Positions 24,486 to 44,052 of a DNA stretch of 64,000 bases are shown here, in pieces. Every line of letters starts with the position of its first letter. The stretch's first letter is position 1. Under the pieces are notes generated by a model that saw only the letters and a list, made by a program, of their open reading frames with translations, searched no databases and was not told the origin of the DNA. The stretch covers positions 67,394,001 to 67,458,000 of the forward strand of contig NW_026262668.1 in the NCBI RefSeq assembly GCF_021869535.1, given 5' to 3'. This stretch comes from Mytilus californianus (lineage: Eukaryota). The translations under genes were made by a program, and so were the position numbers.

Positions 24486-24767
24486 TCATTCTTTAATCAT
24501 AGTATTGAATTGTTCAGCATTCCAGTTCATTCTTGTTCTAACTCCAATTATGCCGAGTTCTTGTGCATTCTTATATTGCTGATGATTCAAATATTCTACA
24601 CCGACATCTTTCCATTTTCCTGCTTTCATCAGATTCGCCGTCTTTGGACCAAGATCGCCTCTGTATATTGCACTTATGACTGCAGACTTGACATTTGCTG
24701 GTAAGGAATCATATACGCTGTCTCCAAGTCTCGTTTTGGCTCTATTCACGTGCTCGGTTATGTCATG
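24486..24767 (-). CDS. Terminal exon of phage-type (GH24/T4-like) lysozyme gene
   Basis: AG acceptor at 24769-24768, phase 0; HDITEHVNRAKTRLGDSVYDSLPANVKSAVISAIYRGDLGPKTANLMKAGKWKDVGVEYLNHQQYKNAQELGIIGVRTRMNWNAEQFNTMIKE*; resembles the GH24 C-terminal lobe (Y..LP..v..A, G.W...a.E, G...R); AATAAA on - at 24404-24399. Confidence 0.78.
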   Translation of the reverse strand, partial: HDITEHVNRAKTRLGDSVYDSLPANVKSAVISAIYRGDLGPKTANLMKAGKWKDVGVEYLNHQQYKNAQELGIIGVRTRMNWNAEQFNTMIKE

Positions 24768-25452
24768 CTTTATTATAATAAAAGAGACAAAATCATCTTA
24801 ATTATCAAATTTAATTGACTTACTTGTTTCGTAAGCTTTTTTACCTTGGGGAACATGGTCCCAAAAATAGACTTCGATGGATAAGCCTACTTAAGAGCAA
24901 TTTCAAACTGCCCTCCAATGAAATGCTATTTGTCGAAAGCAAATTTCTATCCAAGTAAGCCAATTAGTTAGGAACATCCTCCTCCGTAGGTATATTAGTT
25001 TGTCAATAAAATCAATTTCATTTAGAATTAACATTTTGAGTGAGATTATTCTGACTGGAAATATATTTAAACATTACTTGACTGACGTGTTTATAGAGAT
25101 ATAAAACATTTTCAAATGTGACTCCAGATTCAAACATAATCTAAATTGATTATCATACGCATTTTTTAATTTCATGTATTGCATTTCAAATCGGATATAC
25201 TATGTTTTATTCGTGCACGGAACTAGAAATGTCTTGTTTCCACTGAAATAGTACTCCATCCAATCGTTTTGTTTGAAATAATAATAAATTTTCTTTACAA
25301 ATGTTTTAGTTTCAAAATTATCTGCCTGTTTCTGCCGTAAAAATATAGGTTCAGGTAATCTAAATTTCTATCATTAAGTCCAAAAGCATTATCATTAGGC
25401 TACCTCATCAACAAAAAATTAGTTCAGACTGGTGACTTATGATTATACTTAC

Positions 25453-25583
25453 ATTAAATAGCTTACGAGCTTGTTCCTTTGTTATGTTTTGTTGTCCCGT
25501 CTTAACCTTGTCAAAATCAACCTCTGGGACAAGTTTTTGGAACGTTGCTTTTGCATCAGATCTGTTCAAGTTGAACCCATAAC
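25453..25583 (-). CDS. Internal exon of phage-type lysozyme gene
   Basis: TTTTAG| acceptor, |GTAAGT donor, 131 nt (phase 1 to 0); (G)YGFNLNRSDAKATFQKLVPEVDFDKVKTGQQNITKEQARKLFN; GYGFNL and IT.EQA..LF are GH24 hallmarks. Absent from the ORF track. Confidence 0.8.
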
Positions 25584-26604
25584 CTAAAATTTTAATACCA
25601 AGAAGTTAACCTAATTTGCCGTAAATTTTTTTTATTAACGTTTAAACGGAGATAATGTTACGCATATTTAGCTGTTTGCAATTTTTTGGAATTGAATTTG
25701 ATAACCCTTTTCACCTTGTTATGTTCATTATGTTTTGTCTTGCATCACTGTCGGTTTTCTGCATTGAATGGGGTTATTTTTCATCTAGTTATAATGATGA
25801 CTAGACTCAAGCTGGCAGCCACTTTTAGCAGCCAATCAAGATAGCAGCCACTTTTTTCCAGCAGCCAATTTTGATGATATGTCTAAAAACCCAAAAACTA
25901 TATCAGACTCGAACGTTCTAAAAATCTCAAAATCTAAGTTAAATGTAATTTAAGAGCGGATTTCGACAATTTCACGGCTTGTAGTGATTCTCAAAGGATT
26001 TTTTCGTTTTAAATACCAATAATGATAGCAGCCACTTTTTTTCGAAATTCTAGCTACGATATATGTATTATTTTTTAACGTCTTAATGACCACAGATGTT
26101 CAGCCTTAGAAGTGAACGTCGAACAAACCAACACAAATGACGTCAGTAACTAGAAGCACTCACTAGGTTGATTTCTAGATCCGGCATATTGGTGTCAATG
26201 TGTATAGAAATATCTAGTTTCTACATAACTAATATATGTGCAGTTAGCCGCCGGTTCGATATTCTATATCCAACTAGCTGTGAGCAGTCGGTTCAATATT
26301 CAAACTTATTTGAAAATCATAAAAAATTGAGAGTTAAGAGGAGTGAAAAAAATACGTAGGAAATCGTTTTATGACCCCTTCAAGCTGTCGTAAATTCTCG
26401 TTGTCCTCGAATATAATCCCTTATGTAAGTTGCATAATTGTCTTTATGTAAAAATATAGTTTTTATCAATAAAACAACATTAAAGATGTATTTTATATAC
26501 AATATTTCTTAAAACAATAGAAACGCTAGAAACATTAAAAAAATATCAATAGAAATATTTATGGAAAGCCCCCACCTGTCCTAAAAAATGTATAGTAAAA
26601 ACCT

Positions 26605-29600
26605 ACCAACTTTGACCCCAACAATTTCCGAATGGGCCTAACTCCCAAAAATTCATTTCAGTGTGGCCTTTCCCAAGTTATTACCTTTCATTTGAGCCAT
26701 GTCCGGCGGCGAACTTTACCGTACAGCGCTGGCGAGGCTTACCGAAAGAATGTAGGATGTATACATATTTTTTTCCTTAGCAGCAACTTTGAACCCCAAC
26801 AATTTCCGAATGGGCCTAACTCCCAAAAATTCATTTCAGTGTGGCCTTCCCCAAGTTAATACCTTTTCTTTGAGCCATGTCCGGTGGCGAACTTTACCGT
26901 ACAGCGCTGGCGAGGCTTACCGAAAGAATGTAGGGTGTATACATATTTTTTTCCTTAGCAGCAACTTTGAACCCCAACAATTTCCAAATGGGCCTAACTC
27001 CAAAAAATTCATTTCAATGTGGCCTTCCCCAAGTTATTACCTTTCATTTGAGCCATGTCCGGTGGCGAACTTTACCGTACAGCGCTGGCGAGGCTTACCG
27101 AAAGAATGTAGGGTGTATACATAATTTTTTCCTTAGCAGCAACTTTGAACCCCAACAATTTCCGATTGGGCCTAACTCCCAAAAATTCATTTCAGTGTGG
27201 CCTTCCCCAAGTTATTACCTTTCATTTGAGCCATGTCCGGTGGCGAACTTTACCGTCCAGCGCTGGCGAGGCTTACCGAAAGAATGTAGGGTGTATACAT
27301 ATTTTTTTCCTTAGCAGCAACTTTGAACCCCAACAATTTCCGAATGGGCCTAACTCCCAAAAATTTATTTCAGTGTGGCCTTCCCCCAGTTATTACCTTT
27401 CATTTGAGCCATGTCCGGCGGCGAACTTTACCGTACAGCGCTGGCGAGGCTTACCGAAAGAATGTAGGGTGTATACATATTTTTTTCCTTAGCAGCAACT
27501 TTGAACCCCAACAATTTCCAAATGGGCCTAACTCCCAAATATTCATTTCAGTGTGGCCTTCCCCAAGTTATTACCTTTCATTTGAGTCATGTCCGGTGGC
27601 GAATTTTACCGTACAGCGCTGGCGAGGCTTACCGAAAGAATGTAGGGTGTATACATAATATTTTCCTTAGCAGCAACTTTGAACCCCAACAATTTCCGAA
27701 TGGGCCTTACTCCCAAAAATGTATTTCAGTGTGGCCTTCCCCAAGTTATTACCTTTCATTTGAGCCATGTCCGGTGGCGAACTTTACCGTACAGCGCTGG
27801 CGAGGCTTACCGAAAGAATGTAGGGTGTATACATATTTTTTTCCTTAGCAGAAACTTTGAACCCAAACAATTTCCGAATGGGCCTAATTCCCAAAAATGT
27901 ATTTCAGTGTGGCCTTCCCCAAGTTATTACCTTTCATTTGAGCCATGTCCGGCGGCGAACTTTACCGTACAGCGCTGGCGAGGCTTACCGAAAGAATGTA
28001 GGGTGTATACATATTTTTTTCCTTAGCAGCAACTTTGAACCCCAACAGTTTCCGAATGGGCCTAACTCCCAAAAATTCATTTTAGTGTGGCCTTCCCCAA
28101 GTTATTACCTTTCATTTGAGCCGTGTCCGGTGGCGAATTTTACCGTACAGCGCTGGCGAGGCTTACCGAAAGAATGTAGGGTGTATACATATTTTTTTCC
28201 TTAGCAGAAACTTTGAACCCAAACAATTTCCGAATGGGCCTGACTCCCAAAAATTAATTTCAGTGTGGCCTTCCCCAAGTTATTACCTTTCATTTGAGCC
28301 ATGTCCAGTGGCAAACTTTACCGTACAGCGCTGGCGAGGCTTACCGAAAGAATGTAGGGTGTATACATATTTTTTTCCTTAGCAGCAACTTTGAATTCCA
28401 ACAATTTCCGAATGGGCCTAACTCCCAAAAATTCATTTCAGTGTGGCCTTCCCCATGTTATTACCTTTCATTTGAGCCATGTCCGGTGGCGAACTTTACC
28501 GTACAGCGCTGGCGAGGCTTACCGAAAGAACGTAGGGTGTATACATATTTTTTTCCTTAGCAGCAACTTTGAACCCCAACTATTTCCAAATGGGCCTAAC
28601 TCCCAAATATTCATTTCAGTGTGGCCTTCCCCAAGTTATGACCTTTCATTTGAGCCATGTCCGGTGGCGAACTTTACCGTACCGCGCTGGCGAGGCTTAC
28701 CGAAAGAATGTAGGGTGTATACATATTTTTTTCCTAAGCAGCAACTTTGAACCCCAACAATTTCCGAATGGGCCTAACTCCCCGAAATTTATTTCAGTGT
28801 GGCCTTCCCCAAGTTATTACCTTTCATTTGAGCCATGTCCGGTGGCGAACTTTACCGTACAGCGCTGGCGAGGCTTACCGAAAGAATGTAGGGTGTATAC
28901 ATATTTTTTTCCTTAGCAGCAACTTTGAACCCCAACAATTTCCGAATGGGCCTAACTCCCAAAAATACATTTCAGTGTGGCCTTCCCCAAGTTATTACCT
29001 TTCATTTGAGCCATGTCCGGTTGCGAACTTTACCGTACAGCGCTGGCGAGGCTTACCGAAAGAATGTAGGGTGTATACATATTTTTTTCCTTAGCAGCAA
29101 CTTTGAACCCCAACAATTTCCGAATGGGCCTAACTCCCAAAAATTAATTTCAGTGTGGCCTTCCCCAAGTTATTACCTTTCATTTGAGCAATGTCTGGCG
29201 GCGAACTTTACCGTACAGCGCTGGCGAGGCTTACCGAAAGAATGTAGGGTGTATACATATTTTTTTCCTTAGCAGCAACTTTGAACCCCAACAATTTCCG
29301 AATGGGCCTATCTCCCAAAAATTCATTTCAGTGTGGCCTTCCCCAAGTTATTACCTTTCATTTGAGCCATGTCCGGTGGCGAACTTTACCGTACAGCGCT
29401 GGCGAGGCTTACCGAAAGAATGTAGGGTGTATACATATTTGTTTCCTTAGCAGCAACTTTGAACCCCAACAATTTCCGAATTGGCCTAACTCCCAAAAAT
29501 TCATTTTAGTGTGGCCTTCCCCAAGTTATTACCTTTCATTTGAGCCATGTCCGGTGGCGAATTTTACCGTACAGCGCTGGCGAGGCTTACCGAAAGAATG

Positions 29601-30895
29601 TAGGGTGTATACATATTTTTTTCCTTAGCAGAAACTTTGAACCCAAACAATTTCCGAATGGGCCTGACTCCCAAAAATTCATTTCAGTGTGGCCTTCCCC
29701 AAGTTATTACCTTTCATTTGAGCCATGTCCAGTGGCAAACTTTACCGTACAGCGCTGGCGAGGCTTACCGAATGAATGTAGGGTGTATACATATTTTTTT
29801 CCTTAGCAGCAACTTTGAATTCCAACAATTTCCGAATGGGCCTAACTCCCAAAAATTCATTTCAGTGTGGCCTTCCCCAAGTTATTACCTTTCATTTGAG
29901 CCATGTCGGGCGGCGAACTTTACCGTACAGCGCTGGCGAGGCTTACCGAAAGAATGTAGGGTGTATACATATTTTTTTCCTTAGCAGCAACTTTGAACCC
30001 CAACAGTTTCCGAATGGGCCTAACTCCCAAAAATTCATTTCAGTGTGGCCTTCCCCAAGTTATTACCTTTCATTTGAGCCATGTCCGGTGGCGAACTTTA
30101 CCGTACAGCGCTGGCGAGGCTTACCGAAAGAACGTAGGGTGTATACATATTTTTTTCCTTAGCAGCAACTTTGAACCCCAACTATTTCCAAATGGGCCTA
30201 ACTCCCAAATATTCATTTCAGTGTGGCCTTCCCCAAGTTATGACCTTTCATTTGAGCCATGTCCGGTGGCGAACTTTACCGTACCGCGCTGGCGAGGCTT
30301 ACCGAAAGAATGTAGGGTGTATACATATTTTTTTCCTTAGCAGCAACTTTGAACCCCAACAATTTCCGAATGGGCCTAACTCCCCAAAATTTATTTCAGT
30401 GTGGCCTTCCCCAAGTTATTACCTTTCATTTGAGCCATGTCCGGTGGCGAACTTTACCGTACAGCGCTGGCGAGCCTTACCGAAAGAATGTAGGGTGTAT
30501 ACATATTTTTTTCCTTAGCAGCAACTTTGAACCCCAACAATTTCCGAATGGGCGTAACTCCCAAAAATTAATTTCAGTGTGGCCTTCCCCAAGTTATTAC
30601 CTTTCATTTGAGCCATGTCTGGCGGCGAACTTTACCGTACAGCGCTGGCGAGGCTTACCGAAAGAATGTAGGGTGTATACATATTTGTTTCCTTAGCAGC
30701 AACTTTGAACCCCAACAATTTCCGAATTGGCCTAACTCCCAAAAATTCATTTCAGTGTGGCCTTCCCCAAGTTATTACCTTTCATTTGAGCCATGTCCGG
30801 TGGCGAACTTTACCGTACAGCGCTGGCGAGGCTTACCGAAAGAATGTAGGGTGTATACGTATTTTCTTCTTCTTAAAAGTAACTGTGAACCCCAA
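26605..30895 (+). repeat. 178-bp tandem satellite array, about 24 copies (left arm)
   Basis: Repeat ORF starts recur at exact 178-bp steps from 26789 to 30705; monomers differ only by substitutions; last monomer degenerate. Confidence 0.97.
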
Positions 30896-30909
30896 GACAC
30901 AATTGAACA

Positions 30910-31146
30910 GTTATGTACGGGAAAAGTCGCAACAGGACATGTCACAATTGAAAGGTCATACATCAGAGCAAGGTGCAAGGAAATATACGTTTGGGGGTTA
31001 GAACCTTCTGGGAATTGAGGTTCAAAGTTGCTGTTTAATTATTTGTTTACGTGTCTACCGTTCATTATTTAGGAAATCCTCAAAAGGAAATAAATGATAC
31101 GAAATCAGTACAGATCAAATGAATTCTTTTTCGGGGGTTAGAACCT
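30910..31146 (-). repeat. Decayed inverted 178-bp monomers marking the foldback axis
   Basis: TGTACGGGAAAAGTCGCAACAGGACATG, TTTGGGGGTTAGAACC, GAGGTTCAAAGTTGCTG and AAATGAATTCTTTTTCGGGGTTAGAACC align in order with the right-arm monomer. Confidence 0.7.
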
Positions 31147-32816
31147 GAAACTACTGTAAAAAGGCGACCGACAGAAGAACTGTTACAAGATGTTGCTGAA
31201 CTGAAATCTGTAACGAAGCTTATCAAAACAAATCAAAAGACATTATCTGATCTTAATGAAAAGACAATCGAAATTATTGAACAACAAGAAGAAATCGACG
31301 AAGACATTAAAGAAGTTGACAGATACGAGTTAGAGATACAGATTGCTATCACGAAAATTGAGAAGTACTCCAAGAAGTACGTCTGTCAAAAATCAATCCG
31401 CATTAAACACTCAAGCACCATATTTCATATATACACTAACCCAAGCGTAAAAGAACATACAAATCCGATAAATTTCAACTCAAAACAAACGAGCGTAAGC
31501 CAATCAGACATGTCAAATCATGACAACAAATTGCCTAAACCCAACCTACCCACTTTTGGCGGAAATGTACTAGAATTGTCAACCTTATGGGATACATATT
31601 ATTCTGTCGTACATGAAAATCCTTCATTGAGTGGCGTACAAATATTGCACTATCGGAAACTGCAACTTTACGGAGAAACTATCCACTGTATATCGGGAAT
31701 GCAAATTACAAGTACAAATTATAACCAAGCAATACATACTCTACACGAGAGAATTGGCCAACAACACAAAATTGTACACGCATATACATGCAAAACTTGC
31801 TAAATTTGCCGGCACCATATCACAGAATTAAAGGACTAAAATTGTTAAGTGACACGATAGAAAGTTATAAACGTGAACTATGAGGAATTGCCGATATCAA
31901 GAATAGTACGGATGCCAATTGATACCAATAATACTGAAAAAAATTCCATGTTTGGTCAGAAAAAAACATTACTCAAGTCACGGTGATGATGATATCTCAA
32001 GATTACACAAAGCAGTAAAGAAAGAAATTTGTATACGAGAGGCCACTAATGCCAATCCTATTGAAACCGACATTATCTCAACAGCATTGTTGGTAACAGG
32101 AAATCAAACACAAGATGAAGGTCAACATGGTCTAAAGAAAGTTTCGACAATAGTACATTTCAGACTGTGTTTTCCAAATGAATTTAAAGTCACTAATATT
32201 AAGGCCCGCACAAAAATCTTCAAGGAATAAAATTAAAAGTTTCGATAATTATAAGGTTTCGGAATGTAAGTTACAATATAGCTTCCGATAAGTAAGACAC
32301 GTCATACCAGCATTTGCCGTAATAATTTACAAAATAGAAATTCCACTTCGAATGAAGATAAAACCTAATCAAACCTAACATAACCGGCGAATGGAGATTT
32401 TCTAAGTACAGAAACAAAGAGCATCGCTATTCATTCTGCTCTAACAGCACCTACCAAAGACTATCAAAATTTGCCGTAGCGCCCGAGTGATACCATGACG
32501 AAAGTGGTTTGACTAACATATCATACTTGAATAAAGGCACACAAAACTCATTTATTTCACAATAAGTGGTGAAATGGTATAGTAAGTAATCCAATTTCTG
32601 CATTTCTTCAGGAAAGAAGATTAGGTATGCAACCTGGAGAAAGCGACAATATCAGTTGAGATCGAAAGAAAAGAAGGAATTCCAATAGAATTAATAATTA
32701 TTCCAAAAACTGCCCTACCAATACATTTGAAGAAACGTGTAAATATCAACAACTTGACCTATTTACGAGGATTACAATTTTACCACCAAGTCACAAGCGA
32801 AAAAAAGTACAATATA
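31146..32816 (+). mobile_element. Degenerate BEL/Pao gag-protease fragment
   Basis: DUF1759-type motif KLPKPNLPTFGGNVLE...WD; frameshifted gag; protease-like region near 32520-32560; many stops. Confidence 0.75.
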
Positions 32817-32987
32817 TCTTGCTTTTCCTTTAATGTATCAAGAATTGTTTCTAACTCGTCCTATTCCGGTTTTTCTTCTGATTCACTCTTCTCGTCAAAT
32901 CTTCTTAAAATCATAGAAACTGCGCTTCTGTGTCCCGCTCAAATAGATTTAAGCTTTGTAGTCATCTTCTTCTGGTCACGGTACCAA
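32817..32987 (-). mobile_element. Second PBS plus gag start directly after the 3' LTR (truncated tandem copy)
   Basis: TGGTACCGTGACCAGAAGAAGATGACTACAAAG duplicates 35488-35320. Confidence 0.75.
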
Positions 32988-35664
32988 TATCGTAAAGTGG
33001 TTTTACTAAAACTGCATTTGTAATAAGAAAGACGTCTAAACTGTATGAATTTGTATTGATAACTAAAGAACAAGATAACGTCATAAGTTAACGACGTTGG
33101 ATATACAATACTGCCGCATTACGTTCACGTTTTCTTCTGCGCGTGATTTCCAACATTCTCCGGCTGATGAAAAGTGAAAATTCTTAAATTTAGAAAATAA
33201 TCAAAGTCTCTCCCTTTAAATAAATAACATGAAATTACCTTTAAAGTCAATCAGTAACTTTAAAACGTTTACCACAGTTTTTTATAGTACGGTGTCACAT
33301 TTATTTCACTTTCTTTTTTTCTGGTAAGTTTCTCCCTGTAATCCAATTCCTGATATAACGTAAGCTGTTTGAACGGAGATTTTGATATTCTCATGCCTTG
33401 TACATCATCGTAAAAGTATTTGTTTTGGTTAGTGTCTCTTGTCCACATTAAATCTGATTTGTCTGTTTCATTTACTGTCAACGGACCAGTGGTTCTTTGT
33501 TTTGTCCTTGAAGTGTCCATAATTCTAGAAATATGTTCAATGTTAATAGTATTCCTCTCTGTTTTATCCTCGGTATTGTGCGTCTCTTTTTTTTCTCCTA
33601 AATTTGTAGCACGAGAGTGTGCTTTGTTGATTGAACTGGTTCTTTTGAGTGGTCCTGAGAGCAGGTATCTTAGTTTGGACTTTACTGCTGTTTGCCCCTC
33701 GCCCCTTACGATTTCATCCTCGACCATATCCCAGAATTGGTCAGCTCTTACAAGCAGTCCAATTTCAAATGATGTATCCTCAGTTACAGCGTGTGCTAAT
33801 CTTAAGTTTTGCAAATACGGCAACTGTTTTTGCATTTTCAATATCAGCCTTAAATGGTGCGGCGATTTTCTGTACAATCAAAACATCGACTGGTATTTCT
33901 TAGCCATAGATAGTTTGTATCTTCACTGTTGCTTTTTTTAGCTGTTCAATAGAGTTGTTCTCATTATTGTCTCCAAATCTAGATAGGGTAATTGCTTCAC
34001 TTCCTGTGGTTCTTAACTCCTTTTCTCTGCTAAATGTCTTGTATACGTAATAAATGACCTTGTGCCGATTCGTCAAAAAGGATCTTTGCATCAATCGATT
34101 GTTCTTTGTAGTTTAGTGGTGCTATTGCGGTCTTCAACAAAACATTAGGGCGATCACAGTTTAAAGATGAATAAAATTGTATCAGCTTCCTCCGCGTTGT
34201 GTGTTTTTACTGTATATGTACTACTTGAACTTAAAGTTTCCTTATCATGTTCTTTGCTGCATAGGCTTGTGTGGTGACGTCTATTACATTTCTTGCAGTT
34301 TGATTTAGATTTGCAATATATTACGCGGTGTCGCCTTAAGCAATTAAAGCACAATCTATCTTCTTTCACAATTTTCATGCGGTCGATGTGGTCTGTATAT
34401 TTGGTACATTCAGACGAAAAGTGGGGTTCCTTGCAGTATGCGCAGCTTATTTGATAATATTTCTGTGGTGAATTGGCATTTGGCCAGATTTCGCGCGATT
34501 TTGAGTCTGTGTAGAAAGTACATGTAGCTGTTTCAAATGTTTCTGTACTTCTACCAGACTCTAAAATTGCTAGCTCCTTAAAAATAGATCTCCTAAGATC
34601 ACCGATAAACCAATCCGTCGAACCATGTTCACGAGTCAAGTGTTTGCGTATTTCACTGGGCATTTTGTTGAGAATGACTGGTACTAATAACGAGCCGTAC
34701 AAGTCTTGAGCTTGTTCGAGAGATTCTAGTCCACGTATGTCTGTTTCTGTCCTGTCTTAGTAACCTCTTAGATGTGTAAGCATATTCTTTGGTGTGGGTA
34801 TGTCTAGTAGTGCTTGCATGTACGATTGAATTATCTTATGCTTTTGTTCGAATCTTTCATGTATAAGTCCAATAGCTTTGTTGTAGTTTGTGTGCGTTAG
34901 AGCAAATCCGGCAATGGTGTATGACGCTTCTCCTTTTAGTAAAGAATTTAGGTAGTTGAATTTTTGAACGACGGTTAGTGTGTTGTTGTTGTGAATTGCT
35001 GAATCAAATGAATCCCAAAAAAATTGCCATTCAAGTACGTTTCCATCAAATGTAGGTAAGTTCAATTTCGGTAGTTTAGTAAAGTTGCTGATATTAACAC
35101 TTGAATTTGAACGTAAAGACGTGAAGTTGAGGCCAGTATTTTGAGAGTCATCTCTAACGTTATATGCGGGGCCAACATTTTGAATGGGTTGCAGTGTCTC
35201 ACTGTGTGGCAAAAACTTCTAGCGGCTGCATTTAAATCAGATGTTTGAACGTGAATGAATTTACGAAGAATTTTGCGTATTCTCGTCTCTAAGTTAAATT
35301 TATAATCATCTGTGTCAAGTTTGCTTTTCCTTTAATGTATCAAGAATTGTTTCCAACTCGTCCTCTTCCGGTTTTTCTTCTGATTCACTCTTCTCGTATA
35401 CTCTTCTTAAAATTATTGAAACTACGCTTCTGTGTCCCGCTCGAATAGATTTAAGCTTTGTAGTCATCTTCTTCTGGTCACAGTACCAATATCGTAAAGT
35501 GGTTTTACTAAAACTGCATTTGTAATAAGAAAGAGGTCTAAACTGTATGAATTTGTATTGATGATTGAAGTACAAGATAACGTCATAAGTTTACGACGTT
35601 GGATATACAAATTACAATAATGCCACGTTACGTTAACGTTCTCTTCTCTGCGTGATTTCCAACA
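32988..35664 (-). mobile_element. Compact BEL/Pao LTR element: LTR-PBS-gag-protease-LTR, no RT/RNase H/integrase
   Basis: Two direct repeats of about 170 bp starting TGTTGGAAATCACGC (35664 and 33155); PBS TGGTAC(T/C)GTGACCAG (tRNA-His-like) at 35488; ATG 35467; DUF1759; three Cys-His knuckles (CAYC..H..C, CFNC..H..C, CKKC..HH..C); protease ILFDES; purine tract GCCGGAGAA before the 3' LTR; ORF frameshifted. Confidence 0.85.
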
Positions 35665-35669
35665 ATATC

Positions 35670-35870
35670 ACTACTTATTGGAGCAGATTACTGGTCTTTA
35701 GTATGAGATGAAATTATTCAAGGTGACGGACCAACAGCGGAATCCAGCAGATTAACTCACTCGAGGACTGACTGCGGAACAGTTTTTCAGAACTCACTCT
35801 GGGTTAACGGACCCGAATGGCTAACGGATAAGGAAAAGGGCCGACATGAATGTAAACGCTCACAGATAGT
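35670..35870 (+). mobile_element. BEL/Pao pol fragment (RNase H/integrase linker)
   Basis: Frameshifted NPAD..TRG...W.NGPEWL motif. Confidence 0.7.
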
Positions 35871-35888
35871 ACCGTATTATCATCATTC

Positions 35889-38115
35889 GTTGGGGTTCAA
35901 AGTTGCTGCTAAGGAAAAAAATATGTATACACCCTACATTCTTTCGGTAAGCCTCGCCAGCGCTGTACGGTAAAATTCGCCACCGGACATTGCTCAAATG
36001 AAAGGTAATAACTTGGGGAAGGCCACACTGAAATGCATTTTTGGGAGTTAGACCCATTCGGAAATTGTTGGGGTTCAAAGTTGCTGCTAATGAAAGAAAT
36101 ATGTATACACCCTACATTCTTTCGGTAAGCCTCGCCAGCGCTGTACGGTAAAGTTCGCAACCGGACATGGCTCAAATGAAAGGTAATAACTTGGGGAAGG
36201 CCACACTGAAATGAATTTTTGGGAATTAGGCCCATTCGGAAATTGTTGGGGTTCAAAGTTGCTGCTAAGGAAAAAAATATGTATACATCCTACATTCTTT
36301 CGGTAAGCCTCGCCAGCGCTGTACGGTAAAGTTCGCCACCGGACATGGCTCAAATGAAAGGTAATAACTTGGGGAAGGCCACACTGAAATGAATTTTTGG
36401 GAGTTAGACCCATTCGGAAATTGTTGGGGTTCAAAGTTGCTGCTAAGGAAAAAAATATGTATACATCCTACATTCTTTCGGTAAGCCTCGCCAGCGCTGT
36501 ACGGTAAAGTTCGCCACCGGACATGGCTCAAATGAAAGGTAATAACTTGGGGAAGGCCACACTGAAATGAATTTTTGGGAGTTAGACCCATTCGGAAATT
36601 GTTGGGGTTCAAAGTTGCTGCTAAGGAAAAAAATATGTATACACCCTACATTCTTTCGGTAAGCCTCGCCAGCGCTGTACAGTAAAGTTCGCCACTGGAC
36701 ATGGCTCAAATGAAAGGTAATAACTTGGGGAAGGCCACACTGAAATGAATTTTTGGGAGTTAGGCCCATTTGGAAATTGTTGGGGTTCAAAGTTGCTGCT
36801 AAGGAATAAAATATGTATACACCCTACATTCTTTCGGTAAGCCTCGCCAGCGCTGTACGGTAAAATTCCCCACTGGACATGGCTCAAATCAAAGGAAATA
36901 ACTTGGGGAAGGCCACACTGAAATGAATTTTTGGGAGTTAGACCCATTCGGAAATTGTTGGGGTTCAAAGTTGCTGCTAAGGAAAAAAATATGTATACAC
37001 CCTACATTCTTTCGGTAAGCCTTGCCAGCGCTGTACGGTAAAGTTCGCCACCGGACATGGCTCAAATGAAAGGTAATAACTTGGGGAAGGCCACACTGAA
37101 ATGAATTTTTGGGAGTTAGGCCCATTCGGAAATTGTTGGGGTTCAAAGTTGCTGCTAAGGAAAAAAATATGTATACACCCTACATTCTTTCGGTAAGCCT
37201 CGCCAGCGCTGTACGGTAAAGTTCGCCACTGGTTATGGCTCAAATGAAAGGTAATAACTTGGGGAAGGCCACACTGAAATGAATTTTTGGGAGTTAGGCC
37301 CATTCGGAAATTGTTGGGGTTCAAAGTTGCTGCTAAGGAATAAAATATGTATACACCCTACATTCTTTCGGTAAGCCTCGCCAGCGCTGTACGGTAAAAT
37401 TCGCCACTGGACATGGCTCAAATGAAAGGTAATAACTTGGGGAAGGCCACACTGAAATGAATTTTTGGGAGTTAGACCCATTCGGAAATTGTTGGGGTTC
37501 AAAGTTGCTGCTAAGGAAAAAAATATGTATACACCCTACATTCTTTCGGTAAGCCTCGCCAGCGCTGTACGGTAAAGTTCGCCACCGGACATGGCTCAAA
37601 TGAAAGGTAATAACTTGGGGAAGGCCACACTGAAATGAATTTTTGGGAGTTAGGCCCATTCGGAAATTGTTGGGGTTCAAAGTTGCTGCTAAGGAATAAA
37701 ATATGTATACACCCTACATTCTTTCGGTAAGCCTCGCCAGCGCTGTACGGTAAAGTTCGCCACTGGACATGGCTCAAATGAAAGGTAATAACTTGGGGAA
37801 GGCCACACTGAAATGAATATTTGGGAGTTAGACCCATTCGGAAATTGTTGGGGTTCAAAGTTGCTGCTAAGGAATAAAATATGTATACACCCTACATTCT
37901 TTCGGTAAGCCTCGTCAGCGCTGTACGGTAAAGTTCGCCACCGGACATGGCTCAAATGAAAGGTAATAACTTGGGGAAGGCCACACTGAAATGAATTTTT
38001 GGGAGTTAGGCCCATTCGGAAATTGTTGGGGTTCAACGTTGCTGCTAAGGAAAAAAATATGTATACACCCTACATTCTTTCGGTAAGCCTCGCCAGCGCT
38101 GTACGGTAAAGTTCG
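35889..38115 (-). repeat. 178-bp tandem satellite array, about 12.5 copies (right arm, inverted)
   Basis: Reverse complement of the left-arm monomer; ORF starts at exact 178-bp steps from 38036 to 36078. Confidence 0.97.
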
Positions 38116-39506
38116 CCACTGGACAGGTGGGGGCTTTCCATAAATATTTCTATTGATATTTTTTAAATGTTTCTAGCGTTAAGGTTATATTTCTATTGTT
38201 TTAAGAAATATTGTATATAAAATACATCTTTAATGTTGTTTTATTGATAAAAACTATATTTTACATAAAGACAATTATGCAACTTACATAAGGGATTATA
38301 TTCGAGGACAACGAGAATTTACGACAGCTTGAAGGGGTCATAAAACGATTTCCTATGTATTTTACCACTCCTCTTAACTCTCAATTTTTTATGATTTTCA
38401 AATAAGTTTGAATATTGAACCGACTGCTCACAGCTAGTTGGATATAGAATATCGAACCGGCGGCTAACTGCACATATATTAGTTATGTAGAAACTAGATA
38501 TTTCTATACACATTGACACCAATATGCCGGATCTAGAAATCAACCTAATGAGTGCTTCTAGTTACTGACGTCATTTGTGTTGGTTTGTTCAACGTTCACT
38601 TCTAAGGCTGAACATCTGTGGTCATTTAGACGTTAGAAAATAATACATATATCGTATTGGTAGCTAGAATCATTATGGTATTTAAAACGAAAAAATCCTT
38701 TGAGAATCACTTCAAGCCGTGAAATTGTCGAATTCCGCTCTCAAATTACATTTAACTTAGATTTTGAGATTTTTAGAACGTTCGAGTCTGTTATAGTTTT
38801 TGGGTTTTTAGACATATCGTCAAAATTGGCTGCTGGAAAAAAGTGGCTGCTATCTTGATTGGCTGCTAAAAGTGGCTGCCAGCTTGAGTCTAGTATAATG
38901 ATGCCTTCATTCCAGTTTCCGAGGCAAGGACTATCAGTGGAATTCGACGAGACATCAAAAGCAAACACCCTTTGCACTGTTACGGGCTATAACATCACTC
39001 TAGTGAAACGTACTCTTTTGAGGATTATTTCGATCTTGTGTAAAAGTAAGGACTAGGTGCATGGCGCGAAAGATGTAAAAATATATTTCGTCTGAAATTT
39101 AGTCCAACAATGTTATATGTGCGGTATAAACTATTTGTCATTTCCTCAGCGGGGTTTGAACTCATTTTTCTGTGACATATCGATAATTCTTCCTGCAATG
39201 ATTCGCAAGGACGACCGTTTGAGACAGGGGGAACGATTAATATTTGCCAGTTTTATTCTCAAGCTGTTCGTTCTATTAAAGGTCGGTTTCATAAATATTT
39301 TGTATTAACTATGTATTTTTTGCGATGAGGCAAATATATTCATACATTTAATCACATATTAAACGATTTGTGTATACTTATTTCACATACAAGTGCAGGT
39401 TTTTTTTTCATTTTCTAGATACCGTACATTCTATTATATGTAGCCTGGCATCCTTTTCGCATCAGACGAGCAGTGAGTCAGGATCCAAAGCTATATTATA
39501 TATTAC

Positions 39507-39608
39507 CTATCGTTGTGTCATGAACTGAAGGGTTTTGGGGTTGTGCATCGTAAGCCTTGAGGTTAGGTTCTCCATTTGTTTCAAACTTAATGATTACGTC
39601 AGTTATAT
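39507..39608 (-). CDS. Upstream exon of phage-type lysozyme gene (catalytic Glu region)
   Basis: TTTGTAG| acceptor, |GTAATA donor, 102 nt (phase 1/1); (D)ITDVIIKFETNGEPNLKAYDAQPQNPSVHDTTI(G); splices in frame to 25583 and rebuilds TTIG-YGFNL across the intron. Confidence 0.78.
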
Positions 39609-39676
39609 CTACAAAGATAATGTATGTGTTACAAATCAAATTTAAAGTAGAAAACTTTTTATATATATATATCATG

Positions 39677-40824
39677 CACAATCATTAGACACTCTACTCT
39701 TAAGCAAGTGTTTAGTGCCGGACAGGAGAAGTCTAGAAATGACCATATTAATACTTTTCATGTATACTCTGGATTCAAGTTGACGATTAAATGTTCATTC
39801 CTCTGAAATAGAAAATGATTTGAAAATTTGCGGCAACAAAATGGCGAAGACGTTCATAGTGCAAGACTCTGGTCCATGTTTTTTAACTAATGATATTCCT
39901 AGACATGTATAGAGGTTCAAGCTTCGCTCTCACCCCATATGGAATTTACTGACCCCATATATATTGTATTAGGTCACTACCACACTATGTAACTAACAAA
40001 ACATGCATGACAAATTTCTTGTCAGTTCAAAACGTATTTGTTTGAACAACGTCATGTCAATCTAAGTGAACATTTTCCCCTTTTGGAATCTAACATATTA
40101 TTTCAGCTGTTATCCCCCAGACATTGCCATATGTTCAGATATAATCAATCTTTAAAATGCACATCTTCATTAATTTTCAGACAAGCAGCAAAGCAGATGT
40201 CGCGTGCACTGAAACGGGTATTATACGTTCATATTACTACATGTAACTATTATGATTTACAGTTGAGTCATCAAAGGTTTAATCTGCCCATAAGCCATGA
40301 ATGCAATTTGTTTTGGTACCGGCATAATTTGAATAACTCATTTTAACTCTAATTCTTTAGTCTGAATTATGTTGTTGTGCTTAAAACTATTACTTCTGGC
40401 AAAGTGGATGAGACAATATTTATTTCTGTGTTGGTTTTTTTAGGAGGGGATAGATAAAATGCTCCTGAATGATTGAATGATTTTGGCTTTTGAAACTATA
40501 TTCTTGAATGTCCTTGGTGAAGGTTCTTCCGAAAAAGAATGTGTCATGCAAACCGAAACCGGCAATGTATGTACGTTTATATATTTAACATGTTTGGTTC
40601 AAAAACTTGGTCCAGAGTCTTGCACTATGAACGTCTTCGTCATTTTGTTGCCGAAAATTTTCAAATCATTTTGTATTTCAGAGGAATGATATTTAATCGT
40701 CAATTTGAATCCAGAGTATAATTCCTTTGACAAGAATTTACATGAGGAGTATTAATATGATCATTTCTAGACTTCTCCTGTCCGGCACTAAACACTTGCT
40801 AGAGTAGAGCGTCTATTGTTAGTG
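39677..40824. mobile_element. MITE-like element with TIRs of about 210 bp, in a lysozyme intron
   Basis: 39677-39885 is the reverse complement of about 40610-40824 (e.g. GCAAGTGTTTAGTGCCGGACAGGAGAAGTCTAGAAATGA); CAC...GTG ends; no clear TSD. Confidence 0.8.
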
Positions 40825-40834
40825 CAGTATGTAT

Positions 40835-41105
40835 AAATTCACAGCCATGTCAGATCGGAATGTAGACGTTTAATTCGATGCCCCATTAAAGCTTTTAGCC
40901 ATTCACGTCAAATAACCCATGCAAAAAACTCTGAGGTCCTAGACAAAATGTCTAGCAACATATCTTCATTTTTCTGCGACAGTCCAAATTTCACACCTTT
41001 CTTCCTAGTCGACTCACCTTGCAGAATCAACCTATTATGTTATTGGTTAATTTGTTTTCCTCCACAATATGAATGAAATATTTGCAGCTGGACATTAAAC
41101 AAGCA
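40835..41105 (+). mobile_element. Degenerate SINE-like copy
   Basis: GTCAGATCGGAATGTAGACGTTTAATTCGATGCC core and CTGGACATTAAACAAGC tail. Confidence 0.4.
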
Positions 41106-42094
41106 ACAAAGAATCGATTTTTGTCGGTATTGATTCATTGCATTAAGAATGTCTACAAAGAATGCTTTCCTTACATTATTTCTTCAAAGTTATATTATAA
41201 AATCAGTAATGTTGTATGATTGCCAATGAGACAAGTTCGACAACTAACCACCAGAGACCAAATGACGTAGATGTTAGCAACTATAGGTTACCGTATAGCC
41301 TCCAACAATGAGCAAAACCCATACCACACAGCAAGCTTTAAATCGAGAAAACCAACGCTGTCTGTGATTCTTTCTTTTTTTTTTTGTAAAATGTTCCATG
41401 AGGTTGCAAAAATCCGAAGATTAATTCTGTTTATAAATGCAAGTGCATTTATGATCAAATACAATCAAAGAAAGACAAGTCAATTATTCTTGATTATGGT
41501 ATCGCCGAGTGTGGCAGATTTTTGGATCAAGTGAAAATCGAAACATCATTTCTTCTTTTTTAAAATCTTCTTATTTAACAGTGGTCCTTAAAGAACGGAA
41601 CTTTAAATGGTGCAACAGCTCATTCAAAGGGGTGGTACAGCGTTATTTTCGTGTGTTTTGTTGATCGATCAACTTATTTACAAATATCCTTTATTTGACG
41701 TTTACTCATGCACTAGAGATTCAACGTTAATTTTTCGGCCATCTTTAATCAAACAGATCATAATTAAAAGGTTGGAATGACAGAAATGCTTAAAAAATCA
41801 TCAAATTATTGGAAATAAATGACAATGTACCAGAACACTATTTTGGTGGCTTGTTAAAGAATTGTTATTGATTTTCTTGAATATGATAAAAGATTGTCAG
41901 TTAAGAACTGAGAAAGAGAAGTCACAAAACTGTTTTTAACACTAAAGACTTCTGTTTCGTGCAAAGATCGTAAAATTCATTTGTAGTTTACGTTTAAATT
42001 ACGTGCACGTACCATCCTCTTTAAAGCGGTAGGTATGCATGTGTGCTCTGTATAAGCATCCTTTTGAAGAGCACTACCATGATATATGATTTTA

Positions 42095-44052
42095 AGGAAA
42101 ATATGTATATTTCCAACTATGTACTGGCTTCCGAAGCTGCATAAAACTCCATACAAATATAGATTTATTTCGTCTTCAAGCCATTGTTCCGCTACTAAAC
42201 TATCTATTCTACTTACTAGTACACTTGGTACAATCAAAAACCTGGTAATAAATTGTTCAAATAAGGCCTTTGAAAATAGTGGAATTAATTACTTTTGGAG
42301 TGTCAAAAATTCGTTGGAAGTACTTGATAAGTTGCATGCTTATATTGGTGATTTCGAATCTGTTCAAAGTTTTGATTTTTCTACCCTATATACCACGTTG
42401 CCTCATAATCTTATTAAGAAAAAAATCACACACCTGATTAAATGGGCATTTAAAAAGTCGGAATGCGAATATATATGTTCAAACTCTTATAGGTCATTTT
42501 TTAGTAACAACAAACAAAAGAACTATGTCAATTGGACCTGCTTTGATACTATAACTGCCCTTGAGTTTTTACTAGATAACATTTTTGTTCGCTATGGAGA
42601 TTCCGTATATCGTCAGGTTATCGGAATTCCCATGGGGACTAACTGTGCACCACTTATTGCGGACCTGTTTCTGTATTGTTATAAGTTACAATTTATGACT
42701 AAAATCAGCAAAGACCCATCGAAACAACACCTGATTCAAAAATTTAATAACACTTTTAGATATTTAGATGATATATTGACTCTCAATAATGACGACTTCA
42801 GTGTGTACACTAAAGAGATTTATCCTGCCGAACTGACTTTAAATAAAGCTAATACTAACAAAGAACACTGCCCTTTCCTGGATCTTGATATCTTTATCTT
42901 TAACGGGAAGCTTAATACCAAAATTTATGATAAAAGAGATGATTTTTCATTTCCTATTGTTAATTATCCATTTTTAGATGGTGACGTTCCCTTGTCGCAA
43001 TCTTCTGGTGTTTATATATCTCAACTTGTTCGATTCGCTCGTGTATGTAACAACGTATTTGATTTCAACGAAAGAAATCTCTGTATTACTGAAAAATTAT
43101 TACACCAGGGTTTTCGATATCACAAACTAGTCAAAACATTTACTAAATTTTATCATCGGTACAGGGACATCATTCGTAAATATAAACCAACATGCAGACA
43201 TCTTATACGTTCAGGTATTTCACATCCAATATTTTATGGTAATATTCTTTACAAGGCACAAAAATGTCGGCATTCACCTCAAAAGCTTACCAAACCTTTA
43301 AACAGACTTATTCGGAAAGGATATAGTTACGATACTGTTGTCAAGTCATTAAGGATTACATATTTTGGTATTAATATTGATTCACTCATAGGGTCTTTGC
43401 ATCGGAAATAAACACATTTATTCTAAAACAAGTTGTTGGCATGATACGGGTTATGTTCTTCTCATATATTTTATGATGGTATGATACTAAACCCCTAACG
43501 GGAGGGATTGTACTTGATTTTCATATGATGAAGACATAATCTTTTAATCAGTTTAATTGAGGTCTGGAGCTGGCATGTCAGTAACTGCTAGTAGTCCTTT
43601 GTTCATTTATGTATCATTGTCATTTTGCTTAGTTTCTTTTGTTACCTATTCTGACATCGGACTCGGACTTCTTTTAAACTGAGTTTTACTGTGCGTATTG
43701 CTATGTGCTTCTGTATTCTACATTGGCTAGAGGTATAGGGAGAGGGTTGAGATCTCACAAAACATGTTTAACCCCGACGCATTTTTGCGCCTGTCCCAAG
43801 TCAGGAGCCTCTGGCCTTTGTTAGTCTAGTATATTTTTTAATTTTAGTTCATTAATATGTTTTGGAGTTTAGTGTGACGTCCATTTTCACTGAACTAACA
43901 CACAATTTTATTTAGGGGCCAGCTGAGGACCACCTCCGGGTGCGGGATTTTCTCGCTGCATTGAAGACCCATTGGTGGCCTTCGGCTGTTGTCTGCTCTT
44001 TGGTCGGGTTGTTGTCTATTTGACATATTCCCCATTTCCATTCTCAATTTTA
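42095..44052 (+). mobile_element. 5'-truncated Penelope-like retroelement (RT ORF plus 3' UTR)
   Basis: Open RT frame followed by a repeat 3' end of about 640 bp finishing CCCCATTTCCATTCTCAATTTTATT; boundaries approximate. Confidence 0.8.
42119..43411 (+). CDS. Penelope-like reverse transcriptase (uninterrupted, no C-terminal GIY-YIG)
   Basis: YWLPKLHK, RFISSS, DFSTLYTTLPH, GIPMGTNCAPLIADLFLY, FRYLDD, CPFLDL, IYDKRDDF motifs. Confidence 0.88.
   Translation: MYWLPKLHKTPYKYRFISSSSHCSATKLSILLTSTLGTIKNLVINCSNKAFENSGINYFWSVKNSLEVLDKLHAYIGDFESVQSFDFSTLYTTLPHNLIKKKITHLIKWAFKKSECEYICSNSYRSFFSNNKQKNYVNWTCFDTITALEFLLDNIFVRYGDSVYRQVIGIPMGTNCAPLIADLFLYCYKLQFMTKISKDPSKQHLIQKFNNTFRYLDDILTLNNDDFSVYTKEIYPAELTLNKANTNKEHCPFLDLDIFIFNGKLNTKIYDKRDDFSFPIVNYPFLDGDVPLSQSSGVYISQLVRFARVCNNVFDFNERNLCITEKLLHQGFRYHKLVKTFTKFYHRYRDIIRKYKPTCRHLIRSGISHPIFYGNILYKAQKCRHSPQKLTKPLNRLIRKGYSYDTVVKSLRITYFGINIDSLIGSLHRK

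What the first reader, a model, noticed from the sequence alone, without database searches (positions are those of the whole stretch)
25791..38903. 13.1-kb satellite-armed Foldback element inserted in the lysozyme intron
Seen: exact terminal inverted repeats, a perfect 9-bp TSD, and arms of about 800 bp unique sequence plus kilobases of 178-bp repeats. The tips carry repeated GCAGCCA(C/A) motifs that may be transposase sites. Removing the element and one TSD copy shrinks the intron from 13,923 to about 820 bp. Known: 9-bp TSDs with long repeat-containing TIRs fit Foldback/MULE elements. Inferred: a mobile unit that spreads and amplifies a satellite and can transport retroelement cargo. The intact TSD suggests a fairly recent, possibly polymorphic insertion that could affect lysozyme splicing through a multi-kb RNA duplex.
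Basis: partly seen in the sequence, partly recalled or inferred. Interest (0 to 1): 0.85.

Follow-up and report, generated by a model that had tools for sequence, protein, structure and literature searches.

The report
Satellite-armed foldback transposon in mussel
A 13.1-kb hairpin-shaped jumping gene, whose arms are arrays of a 178-bp repeat, sits in an intron of a lysozyme-like mussel gene; it belongs to a family of roughly 200 copies (62 bp to 158 kb) that carries its own satellite DNA, a known kind of element that I found no paper describing in mussels.

Summary
Window 25800-38894 is one element flanked by a perfect 9-bp duplication, ATAATGATG. Its ends are exact inverted repeats for 75 bp. 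Each arm has about 800 bp of unique sequence followed by 178-bp repeats (24 copies on the left, 12.6 on the right).

The genome is Mytilus californianus (scaffold lengths match the published assembly). The terminal 21-mer occurs 446 times there and 0 times in the control. Of 39 neighbouring inverted tip pairs, 30 have perfect 9-bp duplications, and so does this one. Sizes run from 62 bp to 158 kb. The 158-kb copy is almost all satellite.

The "retroelement cargo" is not private to this copy. The same BEL/Pao-derived middle, with the same junction, is present in at least 19 other copies.

Short-read contigs from two other individuals run straight past the insertion point into unrelated sequence. 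The insertion is therefore probably polymorphic.

No transposase gene with these ends was found, so assignment to the Mutator superfamily rests on duplication length and architecture only. Any effect on splicing is untested.

This is a new family of a known kind (Drosophila FB, Tetris, Rehavkus-like). Other notes of this scan flagged what may be the same or a similar foldback on other DNA of this genome.

The parts
25791..25799 (.). Left copy of the 9-bp target-site duplication ATAATGATG
   Evidence: identical to 38895-38903
25800..26606 (+). Left terminal inverted repeat, unique domain (807 bp). The outer 242 bp are shared by all subfamilies, and the outer 75 bp are an exact inverted copy of the right end
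25815..25868 (+). Cluster of four GCAGCCA(C/A) motifs in one orientation (a fifth lies at 26028-26035); candidate transposase-binding sites. The outer 75 bp are 96.7% conserved across 34 distinct tips, against 88% for positions 76-245
26607..30895 (+). Left 178-bp satellite array, 24 copies, about 96% alike
30896..31050 (-). Symmetry axis followed by about one decayed monomer in the reverse orientation (about 70% to the satellite)
31051..35888 (.). Middle domain made of BEL/Pao-type retroelement debris. It holds a plus-strand fragment with a DUF1759 gag piece (31510-31803), interrupted by a minus-strand deletion derivative. That derivative has roughly 350-bp direct repeats read by eye (about 32810-33160 and 35310-35660; the repeated part seen by BLAST is about 215 bp, 32948-33155 vs 35450-35664), a gag (34154-35212, DUF1759, frameshifted here) and a following ORF of unknown family (33269-33877). 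No transposase
35889..38125 (-). Right 178-bp satellite array, 12.6 copies, about 97% alike, inverted relative to the left array
38126..38894 (-). Right terminal inverted repeat, unique domain (769 bp; lacks 30 bp plus part of the first monomer present on the left)
38895..38903 (.). Right copy of the 9-bp target-site duplication ATAATGATG
25584..39506 (-). Host intron (GT...AG, 13,923 bp) that contains the element. The element ends 216 nt from the acceptor and 603 nt from the donor. Flanking exons are 39608-39507 and 25583-25453; the last exon is 24767-24486
   Evidence: reading frame is continuous across the junctions

Best explanation
It is a non-autonomous foldback-type cut-and-paste DNA transposon of Mytilus californianus. 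A transposase made elsewhere in the genome recognises the near-invariant outer part of the ends; this step is inferred. The outer 75-80 bp carry four GCAGCCA(C/A) motifs, and 242 bp are shared by all subfamilies. The transposase excises the whole hairpin-shaped unit and reinserts it with a 9-bp staggered cut, which is shown by the TSDs. The type of enzyme is unidentified; a Mutator-like (MULE/Rehavkus-like) enzyme is the most likely. Everything between the ends travels along: the 178-bp satellite arrays of both arms and a middle domain of dead BEL/Pao retroelement pieces. After insertion the arrays grow and shrink independently in the two arms by unequal exchange or replication slippage; this is inferred from asymmetric arms, block duplications and copies from 62 bp to 158 kb. 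The copy in this window landed in an intron of a lysozyme-like gene and is probably still segregating in the population.
For: Anatomy: the TSD, an exact 75-bp inverted tip and inverted 178-bp arrays.

Family: the tip 30-mer with up to 1 mismatch occurs 97+90 times. The 21-mer with up to 2 mismatches occurs 231+215 times. The reversed-pattern control gives 0 in both cases.

Transposition signature: 30 of 39 adjacent +/- tip pairs have a perfect 9-bp TSD, all with different sequences apart from one insertion present in three duplicated loci. One more pair differs at one base. Three have the TSD displaced by 7-9 extra bases. A 1.38-kb copy and a 62-bp copy also have 9-bp TSDs. The chance of a 9-mer match is about 4e-6 per pair.

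Movement as a unit: the junction-proximal 441 bp of the middle domain recur at 94-96% in at least 19 other copies, and the match always ends at the same satellite junction. Copy L079 shares 4.3 kb of the middle at 97.9% but has a different TSD. Two copies share the same combination of a clade-A left arm and a clade-B right arm.

Satellite confined to the elements: 2,276 hits of a monomer 30-mer, and all 100 listed lie inside four TSD-bounded elements. In the 158-kb copy 19 of 20 evenly spaced samples are satellite. Orientation switches across a middle-domain sample.

Constraint on the ends: the outer 75 bp are 96.7% conserved against 88% further in.

No coding capacity for a transposase: ORFs of the middle hit only DUF1759.

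Polymorphism: contigs of runs X2 (4,089 nt) and X4 (2,112 nt) align up to 25799 and then continue 754 and 831 nt with sequence unlike the arm. The contig of X1 ends exactly at 25799.

Architecture and TSD length match published foldback elements: Tetris has 8-10 bp TSDs, a terminal domain, tandem repeats and a non-coding middle (PMC4079207). Rehavkus has 9-bp TSDs, long TIRs and subterminal tandem repeats that can expand to 80-kb arrays (PMC6446971; bioRxiv 10.1101/2024.12.02.626372).
Against: No autonomous copy or transposase with these ends was found. None of 150 scored MULE-domain hits, 64 OTU hits or 48 IS1595/Merlin-type hits lies inside the listed elements. Of 20 further elements sampled, 18 were classed as subfamily 1 or 2 or diverged subfamily-1-like arms, and two tips continued into unrelated sequence. 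The superfamily, and present-day activity, are therefore inferred.

The letters of the overhanging parts of the X2 and X4 contigs were not shown. 'Empty allele' is the simplest reading but was not seen base by base.

Nine of 39 pairs lack a clean TSD.

The closest relative of this copy's arms is 2.2% away, so the copy lineage is not young.
Confidence: 0.85

Rival explanations
1. It is the same kind of non-autonomous foldback element, but it is mobilised by a transposase of another superfamily that also makes 8-9-bp duplications (for example Merlin/IS1595-like), not by a Mutator-like enzyme.
For: No transposase is linked to the ends. IS1595/Merlin-type DDE genes exist in this genome, with 48 hits. 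[quoted passage not shown]
Against: TSDs are strictly 9 bp in 33 cases. Long TIRs with subterminal tandem repeats and 9-bp TSDs are the published hallmark of MULE-related Rehavkus and foldback elements. MULE-domain genes are far more numerous here: 465 candidates against 65. None of the Merlin-type hits lies in or next to a listed element.
Confidence: 0.1
2. It is a local inverted duplication or an assembly artefact around a retroelement, not a transposon insertion.
For: Long palindromes of near-identical repeats are hard to assemble. HiFi reads averaged 13.4 kb (PMC9710001), about the size of this element. Array lengths could therefore be mis-estimated.
Against: The same ends bound at least 33 other TSD-flanked units on many scaffolds. 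The flank/tip junction is sharp in independent short-read contigs. The middle domain and its junctions recur in at least 19 copies.
Confidence: 0.03
3. The satellite is carried by a Helitron/Helentron-type rolling-circle element, the usual satellite carrier in bivalves, and the inverted ends are incidental.
For: In oysters, dispersed satellite-like arrays are carried by Helentron non-autonomous elements (PMC7492417).
Against: Rolling-circle elements make no TSD and have no terminal inverted repeats. Here both are present and reproducible.
Confidence: 0.01

Closest known systems
Tetris, foldback transposon of Drosophila virilis (Dias et al. 2014, PMC4079207)
   Same: It has a terminal unique domain, then tandem repeats (about 220 bp) inside long TIRs, then a variable non-coding middle domain. 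TSDs are 8-10 bp. The repeats also build satellite arrays. A MITE (DAIBAM) shares only the ends. No autonomous copy is known.
   Different: Only three structurally complete Tetris copies were found in the fly. Here there are dozens of TSD-bounded copies, arrays up to at least 120 kb that are still inside the TSDs, and a middle domain conserved across subfamilies. The host phylum differs. Sequence relatedness was not tested.
Rehavkus (MULE-related) elements and their satellites in Tribolium (bioRxiv 10.1101/2024.12.02.626372; Dupeyron et al. 2019, PMC6446971)
   Same: [quoted passage not shown] The repeats expand from a few copies to tens of kb (80.5-kb array; inverted termini over 11 kb).
   Different: Rehavkus is defined by a transposase with a PHD finger, and none is linked to this family. 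As of 2019 it was reported from arthropods and annelids only. The Tribolium 80-kb array is described as a free array; here the giant array is still bounded by tips and a TSD.
Drosophila melanogaster Foldback (FB) elements
   Same: From general knowledge (not tested here): long inverted arms built of tandem repeats, arms of unequal length, 9-bp TSDs, and most copies lacking any coding sequence.
   Different: FB repeats are short (10-31 bp units) and the copies are a few kb. Here the unit is 178 bp and copies reach 158 kb. No FB sequence was on hand for comparison.
Galileo (P superfamily foldback-like element of Drosophila buzzatii)
   Same: Long TIRs with internal tandem repeats that carry extra transposase-binding sites (as cited in PMC4079207). 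This is the model for the role proposed here for the repeated GCAGCCA(C/A) motifs.
   Different: From general knowledge, Galileo makes 7-bp TSDs and encodes a THAP-domain P-like transposase. Here the TSD is 9 bp and no transposase is known.
Satellite-carrying mobile elements of bivalves (Helentron-borne Cg170-like repeats in oysters, PMC7492417; DTC84 MITE of Donax, PMC3879986)
   Same: A bivalve satellite that is dispersed because it sits inside a mobile element.
   Different: Those carriers are rolling-circle elements or small MITEs with short central arrays. This is a TIR/TSD foldback with inverted arrays in both arms. Full-text searches for 'Mytilus' plus 'foldback' returned no paper describing such an element.

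Membership tests
Foldback-type DNA transposons (structural class: FB, Tetris, Rehavkus-like) | Long terminal inverted repeats that contain tandem repeats and make up most of the element | tested here: met
   Arms of 807/769 bp unique sequence plus 24 and 12.6 copies of a 178-bp unit. Other copies are pure hairpins without a loop (L032, L035).
Foldback-type DNA transposons (structural class: FB, Tetris, Rehavkus-like) | Target-site duplication of fixed length (8-10 bp, typically 9) at independent insertions | tested here: met
   Perfect 9-bp TSDs in this copy, in 30 of 39 other pairs, and in two miniature copies.
Foldback-type DNA transposons (structural class: FB, Tetris, Rehavkus-like) | Multiple dispersed copies sharing the ends but varying in arm length and middle | tested here: met
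   446 tips. Sizes run from 62 bp to 158 kb. Two subfamilies share only the outer 242 bp.
Mutator-like elements (MULE superfamily, including Rehavkus) | Mobilised by a DDE transposase with the MULE domain, encoded by an autonomous copy with the same ends | tested here: inconclusive
   MULE-domain genes are abundant (465 candidates, 150 scored), but none lies in the listed elements. The one MULE examined (L080) has unrelated ends. The census of tips was incomplete because only 100 places are listed per search.
Mutator-like elements (MULE superfamily, including Rehavkus) | 9-bp (8-11 bp) TSD | tested here: met
   ranges per Table 1 of PMC6446971.
Rehavkus | Transposase with a PHD finger | tested here: inconclusive
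   No transposase was found for this family. L080's 1,698-aa protein has NADAR, GDSL, MULE and Ulp1-like matches but no PHD match, and it belongs to another family.
Merlin superfamily | IS1595-like DDE transposase between the ends; 8-9-bp TSD | tested here: inconclusive
   The TSD length is compatible. 48 IS1595-type hits exist in the genome, none inside listed elements.
Helitron/Helentron satellite carriers of bivalves | No TSD, no TIR, rolling-circle end motifs | tested here: not met
   A TSD and TIRs are present.
Hammerhead-ribozyme retrozyme tandem repeats (known from Mytilus) | Type I hammerhead ribozyme in each repeat | tested here: not met
   There is no Rfam match at E up to 1 anywhere in 25000-39800.

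The most novel reading that the evidence does not exclude
The family is the birthplace and, so far as sampled, the only home of the 178-bp satellite and its sister variant. Arrays of more than 100 kb (about 850 monomers in a 158-kb copy) remain bounded by intact tips and a perfect 9-bp TSD. On this reading, either very large hairpins are themselves cut and pasted, which would put them among the largest cut-and-paste elements in animals, or a transposon insertion can seed a satellite block of chromosomal scale in place. Because the family has segregating insertions in a wild mussel, both routes could be followed directly.
Probability: 0.3. Interest if true: 0.6.

Novelty: new member of a known kind. 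Interest (0 to 1): 0.4.

Why it matters
How satellite DNA arises and spreads is usually inferred after the fact. In this family every stage is present in one genome:
- a 62-bp remnant;
- 1.4-kb MITE-like copies with one or two proto-monomers;
- 2-20-kb hairpins;
- a 158-kb block.

All of them are still bounded by the same ends and by 9-bp duplications. This gives a countable system for array growth inside a transposon. It also adds a carrier type to the Helentrons and small MITEs reported in the bivalve papers retrieved here.

For the host gene, the practical point is this: a perfect multi-kb inverted repeat lies 216 nt from a splice acceptor and appears to be absent in some individuals. That makes a natural test of what such a hairpin does to expression. 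None of this changes the picture of how such elements work.

Tried and rejected
- **Rfam on the whole element:** no match, so the repeat is not a ribozyme-bearing retrozyme.
- **Origin of the satellite from the arm's unique domain** (as proposed for Tetris): only chance-level 8-10-nt matches.
- **Target-site motif:** none beyond AT-richness similar to the genome.
- **Higher-order repeat in this copy:** none clear, only a weak lag-8/9 signal.
- **Hunt for an autonomous partner:**
  - The intronless 1,698-aa MULE 19 kb from one copy (L080) has unrelated ends and no clean TSD.
  - Of 20 further elements classed by their inner arm, 15 were subfamily 2, 2 were diverged subfamily-1-like, 1 ran directly into the subfamily-2 satellite, and 2 tips ran into ordinary AT-rich DNA without ORFs.
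- **Second (haplotig) copy of the locus with an empty site:** none in the primary assembly.
- **Copy number from read depth:** not used, because the tool warns that summed contig depth is not a copy number.
- **7-9 extra bases between tip and TSD in three copies:** they might be donor-flank carry-over. One 7-mer resembles another copy's TSD but is one base out of register, and the arms are not close relatives, so I treat it as unexplained.
- **Lysozyme identity of the host gene:** no Pfam or PDB hit for single exons; PHROGs gives only a family of unknown function for the last exon.
Full report
**1. What is in the window**

Reading both ends gives ...ATAATGATG|ACTAGACTCAAGCTGGCAGCC... on the left. 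The right end is its exact reverse complement, followed again by ATAATGATG.
- The element proper is 25800-38894, and the 9-bp duplications are 25791-25799 and 38895-38903.
- The two ends are perfectly complementary for 75 bp.
- The whole unique arm domain (807 bp left, 769 bp right) is 97.8% identical in aligned columns, with three larger indels.

Inside each arm lies an array of a 178-bp unit: 24.1 copies at 26607-30895 and 12.6 copies at 35889-38125, in opposite orientation.
- All 34 in-register monomers are exactly 178 bp.
- Mean identity is 95.9% within the left arm, 97.1% within the right arm and 96.2% between arms.

The left array ends at an axis near 30900 and is followed by about one decayed monomer in the reverse orientation. 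Next come 4.8 kb of non-satellite sequence, and then the right array.

GCAGCCA(C/A) occurs five times per arm in one orientation, at arm positions 16, 29, 45, 62 and 229. Only one further copy occurs in the remaining 64 kb.

**2. Which genome**

G000 has 1,651,950,171 bases in 175 contigs. Three of its contig lengths equal figures published for the Mytilus californianus reference xbMytCali1: the largest scaffold (142,435,203), the N50 (117,871,512) and the NG50 (120,330,192) (against PMC9710001). That assembly is HiFi plus Omni-C, with a mean read of 13.4 kb and heterozygosity of 2.73%.

**3. Is it a transposon family?**

Tip counts in the genome:

| Pattern | Forward | Reverse | Reversed-pattern control |
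|---|---|---|---|
| terminal 30-mer, up to 1 mismatch | 97 | 90 | 0 |
| terminal 21-mer, up to 2 mismatches | 231 | 215 | 0 |

I fetched the flanks of every adjacent +/- pair among the listed places.
- 30 of 39 pairs have a perfect 9-bp duplication.
- One more differs at a single base.
- Three have the duplication displaced by 7-9 extra bases on one side.
- Three of the perfect cases (C109:1154772, C24:21711081, C24:25997784) are one insertion inside a duplicated segment.
- With this window's copy, the 31 perfect TSD-bounded units of this table span 2.0 to 158.2 kb, with a median of 21.8 kb.
- A 1.38-kb MITE-like copy (TSD ACATTGATC) and a 62-bp remnant made of two abutting tips (TSD GGTTCATGA) add two more.

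**4. Subfamilies and what travels with the ends**

The 801-bp arm of this copy has about 40 near-full-length matches at 89-96%. A second subfamily shares only the outer 242 bp. It then has its own roughly 540-bp arm segment and its own 178/179-bp repeat, which is about 83% similar. Of 20 further elements classed by their inner arm, 15 belong to subfamily 2, including all the giants sampled. Across 34 distinct tips the outer 75 bp are 96.7% conserved, against 88% for positions 76-245. That fits a recognition function for the motif-bearing tip.

The middle region is not a private acquisition.
- Its last 441 bp recur at 94-96% inside at least 19 other elements, and the match always stops at the same junction with the satellite.
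- Copy L079, which has a different TSD (ATTCGTTAA), shares 4.3 kb of the middle at 97.9%.
- A subfamily-2 copy has a homologous middle at 77-85%.

The middle is retroelement debris.
- Two ORFs match DUF1759, the gag-type domain of BEL/Pao elements: E = 2e-16 on the plus strand and 2e-28 on the minus strand.
- The minus-strand gag is intact in L079 (352 aa) but frameshifted here.
- It is flanked by direct repeats, about 215 bp by BLAST at 90% and roughly 350 bp by eye.
- No ORF resembles a transposase.

The element is therefore non-autonomous, and the retroelement fragment has been carried through many transpositions.

**5. The satellite lives in the elements**

A 30-mer of the monomer (up to 3 mismatches) occurs 1,234+1,042 times, with 0 in the control. 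All 100 listed places fall inside four TSD-bounded elements. In one of them the exact hits follow an 890-bp (five-monomer) rhythm.

I sampled the 158-kb copy (C165:80709214-80867371, TSD ACATATTTT) every 8 kb.
- 19 of 20 samples are the subfamily-2 satellite.
- Samples up to 18.8 kb are in plus orientation.
- A middle-domain sample lies at 26.8 kb.
- Samples from 34.8 to 154.8 kb are in minus orientation.

So this is one foldback whose right arm alone holds at least 120 kb of satellite.

**6. Age and polymorphism**

Mean pairwise distance among 31 subfamily-1 arms is 2.5%. The two arms of this copy are sisters at 2.25%, and their nearest other relative is at 2.2%. Most copies keep a perfect TSD at that divergence, so an intact TSD says little about age.

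The read evidence is more telling.
- In run X1, probably the source individual, the flank contig ends exactly at 25799.
- In runs X2 and X4 (other samples, another study), contigs of 4,089 and 2,112 nt align up to 25799. They then continue for 754 and 831 nt with sequence that does not match the arm.
- The orientation of record coordinates was checked against the bubble overlap between X4 records 25 and 26.

The simplest reading is an empty site in those animals. The overhang letters were not shown, and both read tools are capped at one call, so this is probable (about 0.8) rather than proven. No second copy of the locus exists in the primary assembly.

**7. Host gene**

On the minus strand the exons 39608-39507, 25583-25453 and 24767-24486 join in frame through GT-AG introns.
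- The intron that holds the element is 13,923 bp, and 810 bp without it.
- The element ends 216 nt from the acceptor.

The lysozyme assignment is only partly supported. The language-model neighbours of the last exon are pesticin-type muramidase and Phage_lysozyme clusters at 0.90-0.92. Single exons give no Pfam or PDB hit, and PHROGs gives only an unnamed family. Any effect of a multi-kb RNA hairpin on splicing is untested.

**8. Mechanism and classification**

- *Shown:* terminal inverted repeats; fixed 9-bp duplications at about 31 independent sites; movement of the arms, arrays and middle as one unit; no transposase inside.
- *Inferred:* mobilisation in trans by a DDE transposase that binds the repeated tip motifs, and array growth after insertion by unequal exchange.

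The superfamily is not established.
- A 9-bp TSD together with long TIRs bearing subterminal tandem repeats is the published signature of MULE-related Rehavkus and of foldback elements such as Tetris.
- MULE-domain genes are plentiful here.
- However, none of the MULE, OTU or Merlin-type hits lies inside a listed element, and the one MULE I inspected has different ends.

I therefore file the element as a foldback-type element that works like Tetris/Rehavkus, not as a proven MULE.

**9. Novelty**

The kind is known. Satellites nested in foldback arms and expanding to tens of kb are described in Drosophila virilis and Tribolium. Full-text searches found no description in Mytilus. The bivalve satellite carriers in the retrieved papers are Helentrons and small MITEs. 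Other first-stage notes of this scan flagged foldbacks with 178-bp arrays elsewhere in this genome, possibly the same family.

Verdict: a real, well-supported new family of a known kind, of moderate interest.

Noticed in passing
G000:C165:80709214-80867371 (loci L077, L078, L103, L110-L129): A 158-kb member of the same family with a perfect 9-bp TSD (ACATATTTT). 19 of 20 samples taken every 8 kb are the subfamily-2 178-bp satellite. The right arm alone is at least 120 kb.
   Followed up: partly
L080 + L089 (G000:C24:20821282-20830449): A 9.17-kb autonomous-looking Mutator-like element of another family. It has roughly 1.05-kb TIRs (91.8%) starting GGCGCCTGCAAAC, with 11-bp AATGTCCTGAC repeats and about 177-bp subterminal tandem repeats. 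Its single 1,698-aa intronless ORF matches GDSL lipase, NADAR, MULE and Ulp1-like protease domains. No clean TSD was seen at this copy.
   Followed up: partly
L082 (G000:C95:737635-737696) and L081 (G000:C110:62323131-62324512): A 62-bp palindrome made of two abutting tips with its own 9-bp TSD, probably a collapsed hairpin. A 1.38-kb MITE-like relative carries only one or two diverged monomers.
   Followed up: partly
L027/L017, L019/L022, and C13:62897799-62926135: In three copies the TSD is separated from one tip by 7-9 extra bases. Two of these copies also share an unusual pairing of a clade-A left arm with a clade-B right arm. The origin of the filler (donor flank carried along?) is unexplained.
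   Followed up: partly
window 24486-39608, minus strand: The host gene looks like a phage-type (T4-like) lysozyme with spliceosomal introns. The published survey of such genes in bivalves names Heterodonta and Palaeoheterodonta (PMC5303276 abstract), while Mytilus is a pteriomorph. The identity is only lead-level here, and another report covers this gene.
   Followed up: partly
window 42086-43411, plus strand: An intact 441-aa ORF with a reverse-transcriptase-like look (motif ...FRYLDDIL...) just downstream of the locus; not examined.
   Followed up: no
window 39663-39890 and 40594-40838; window 39073-39178: A local inverted duplicate (83%) lies upstream of the gene. A roughly 100-bp dispersed repeat with dozens of 71-77% copies genome-wide (SINE-like) lies in the right flank.
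   Followed up: no
G000:C2:14216110-14233939: In a 31.7-kb sister copy, the exact hits of a monomer 30-mer follow a five-monomer (890-bp) rhythm. This suggests a higher-order repeat that is absent from the window copy.
   Followed up: no
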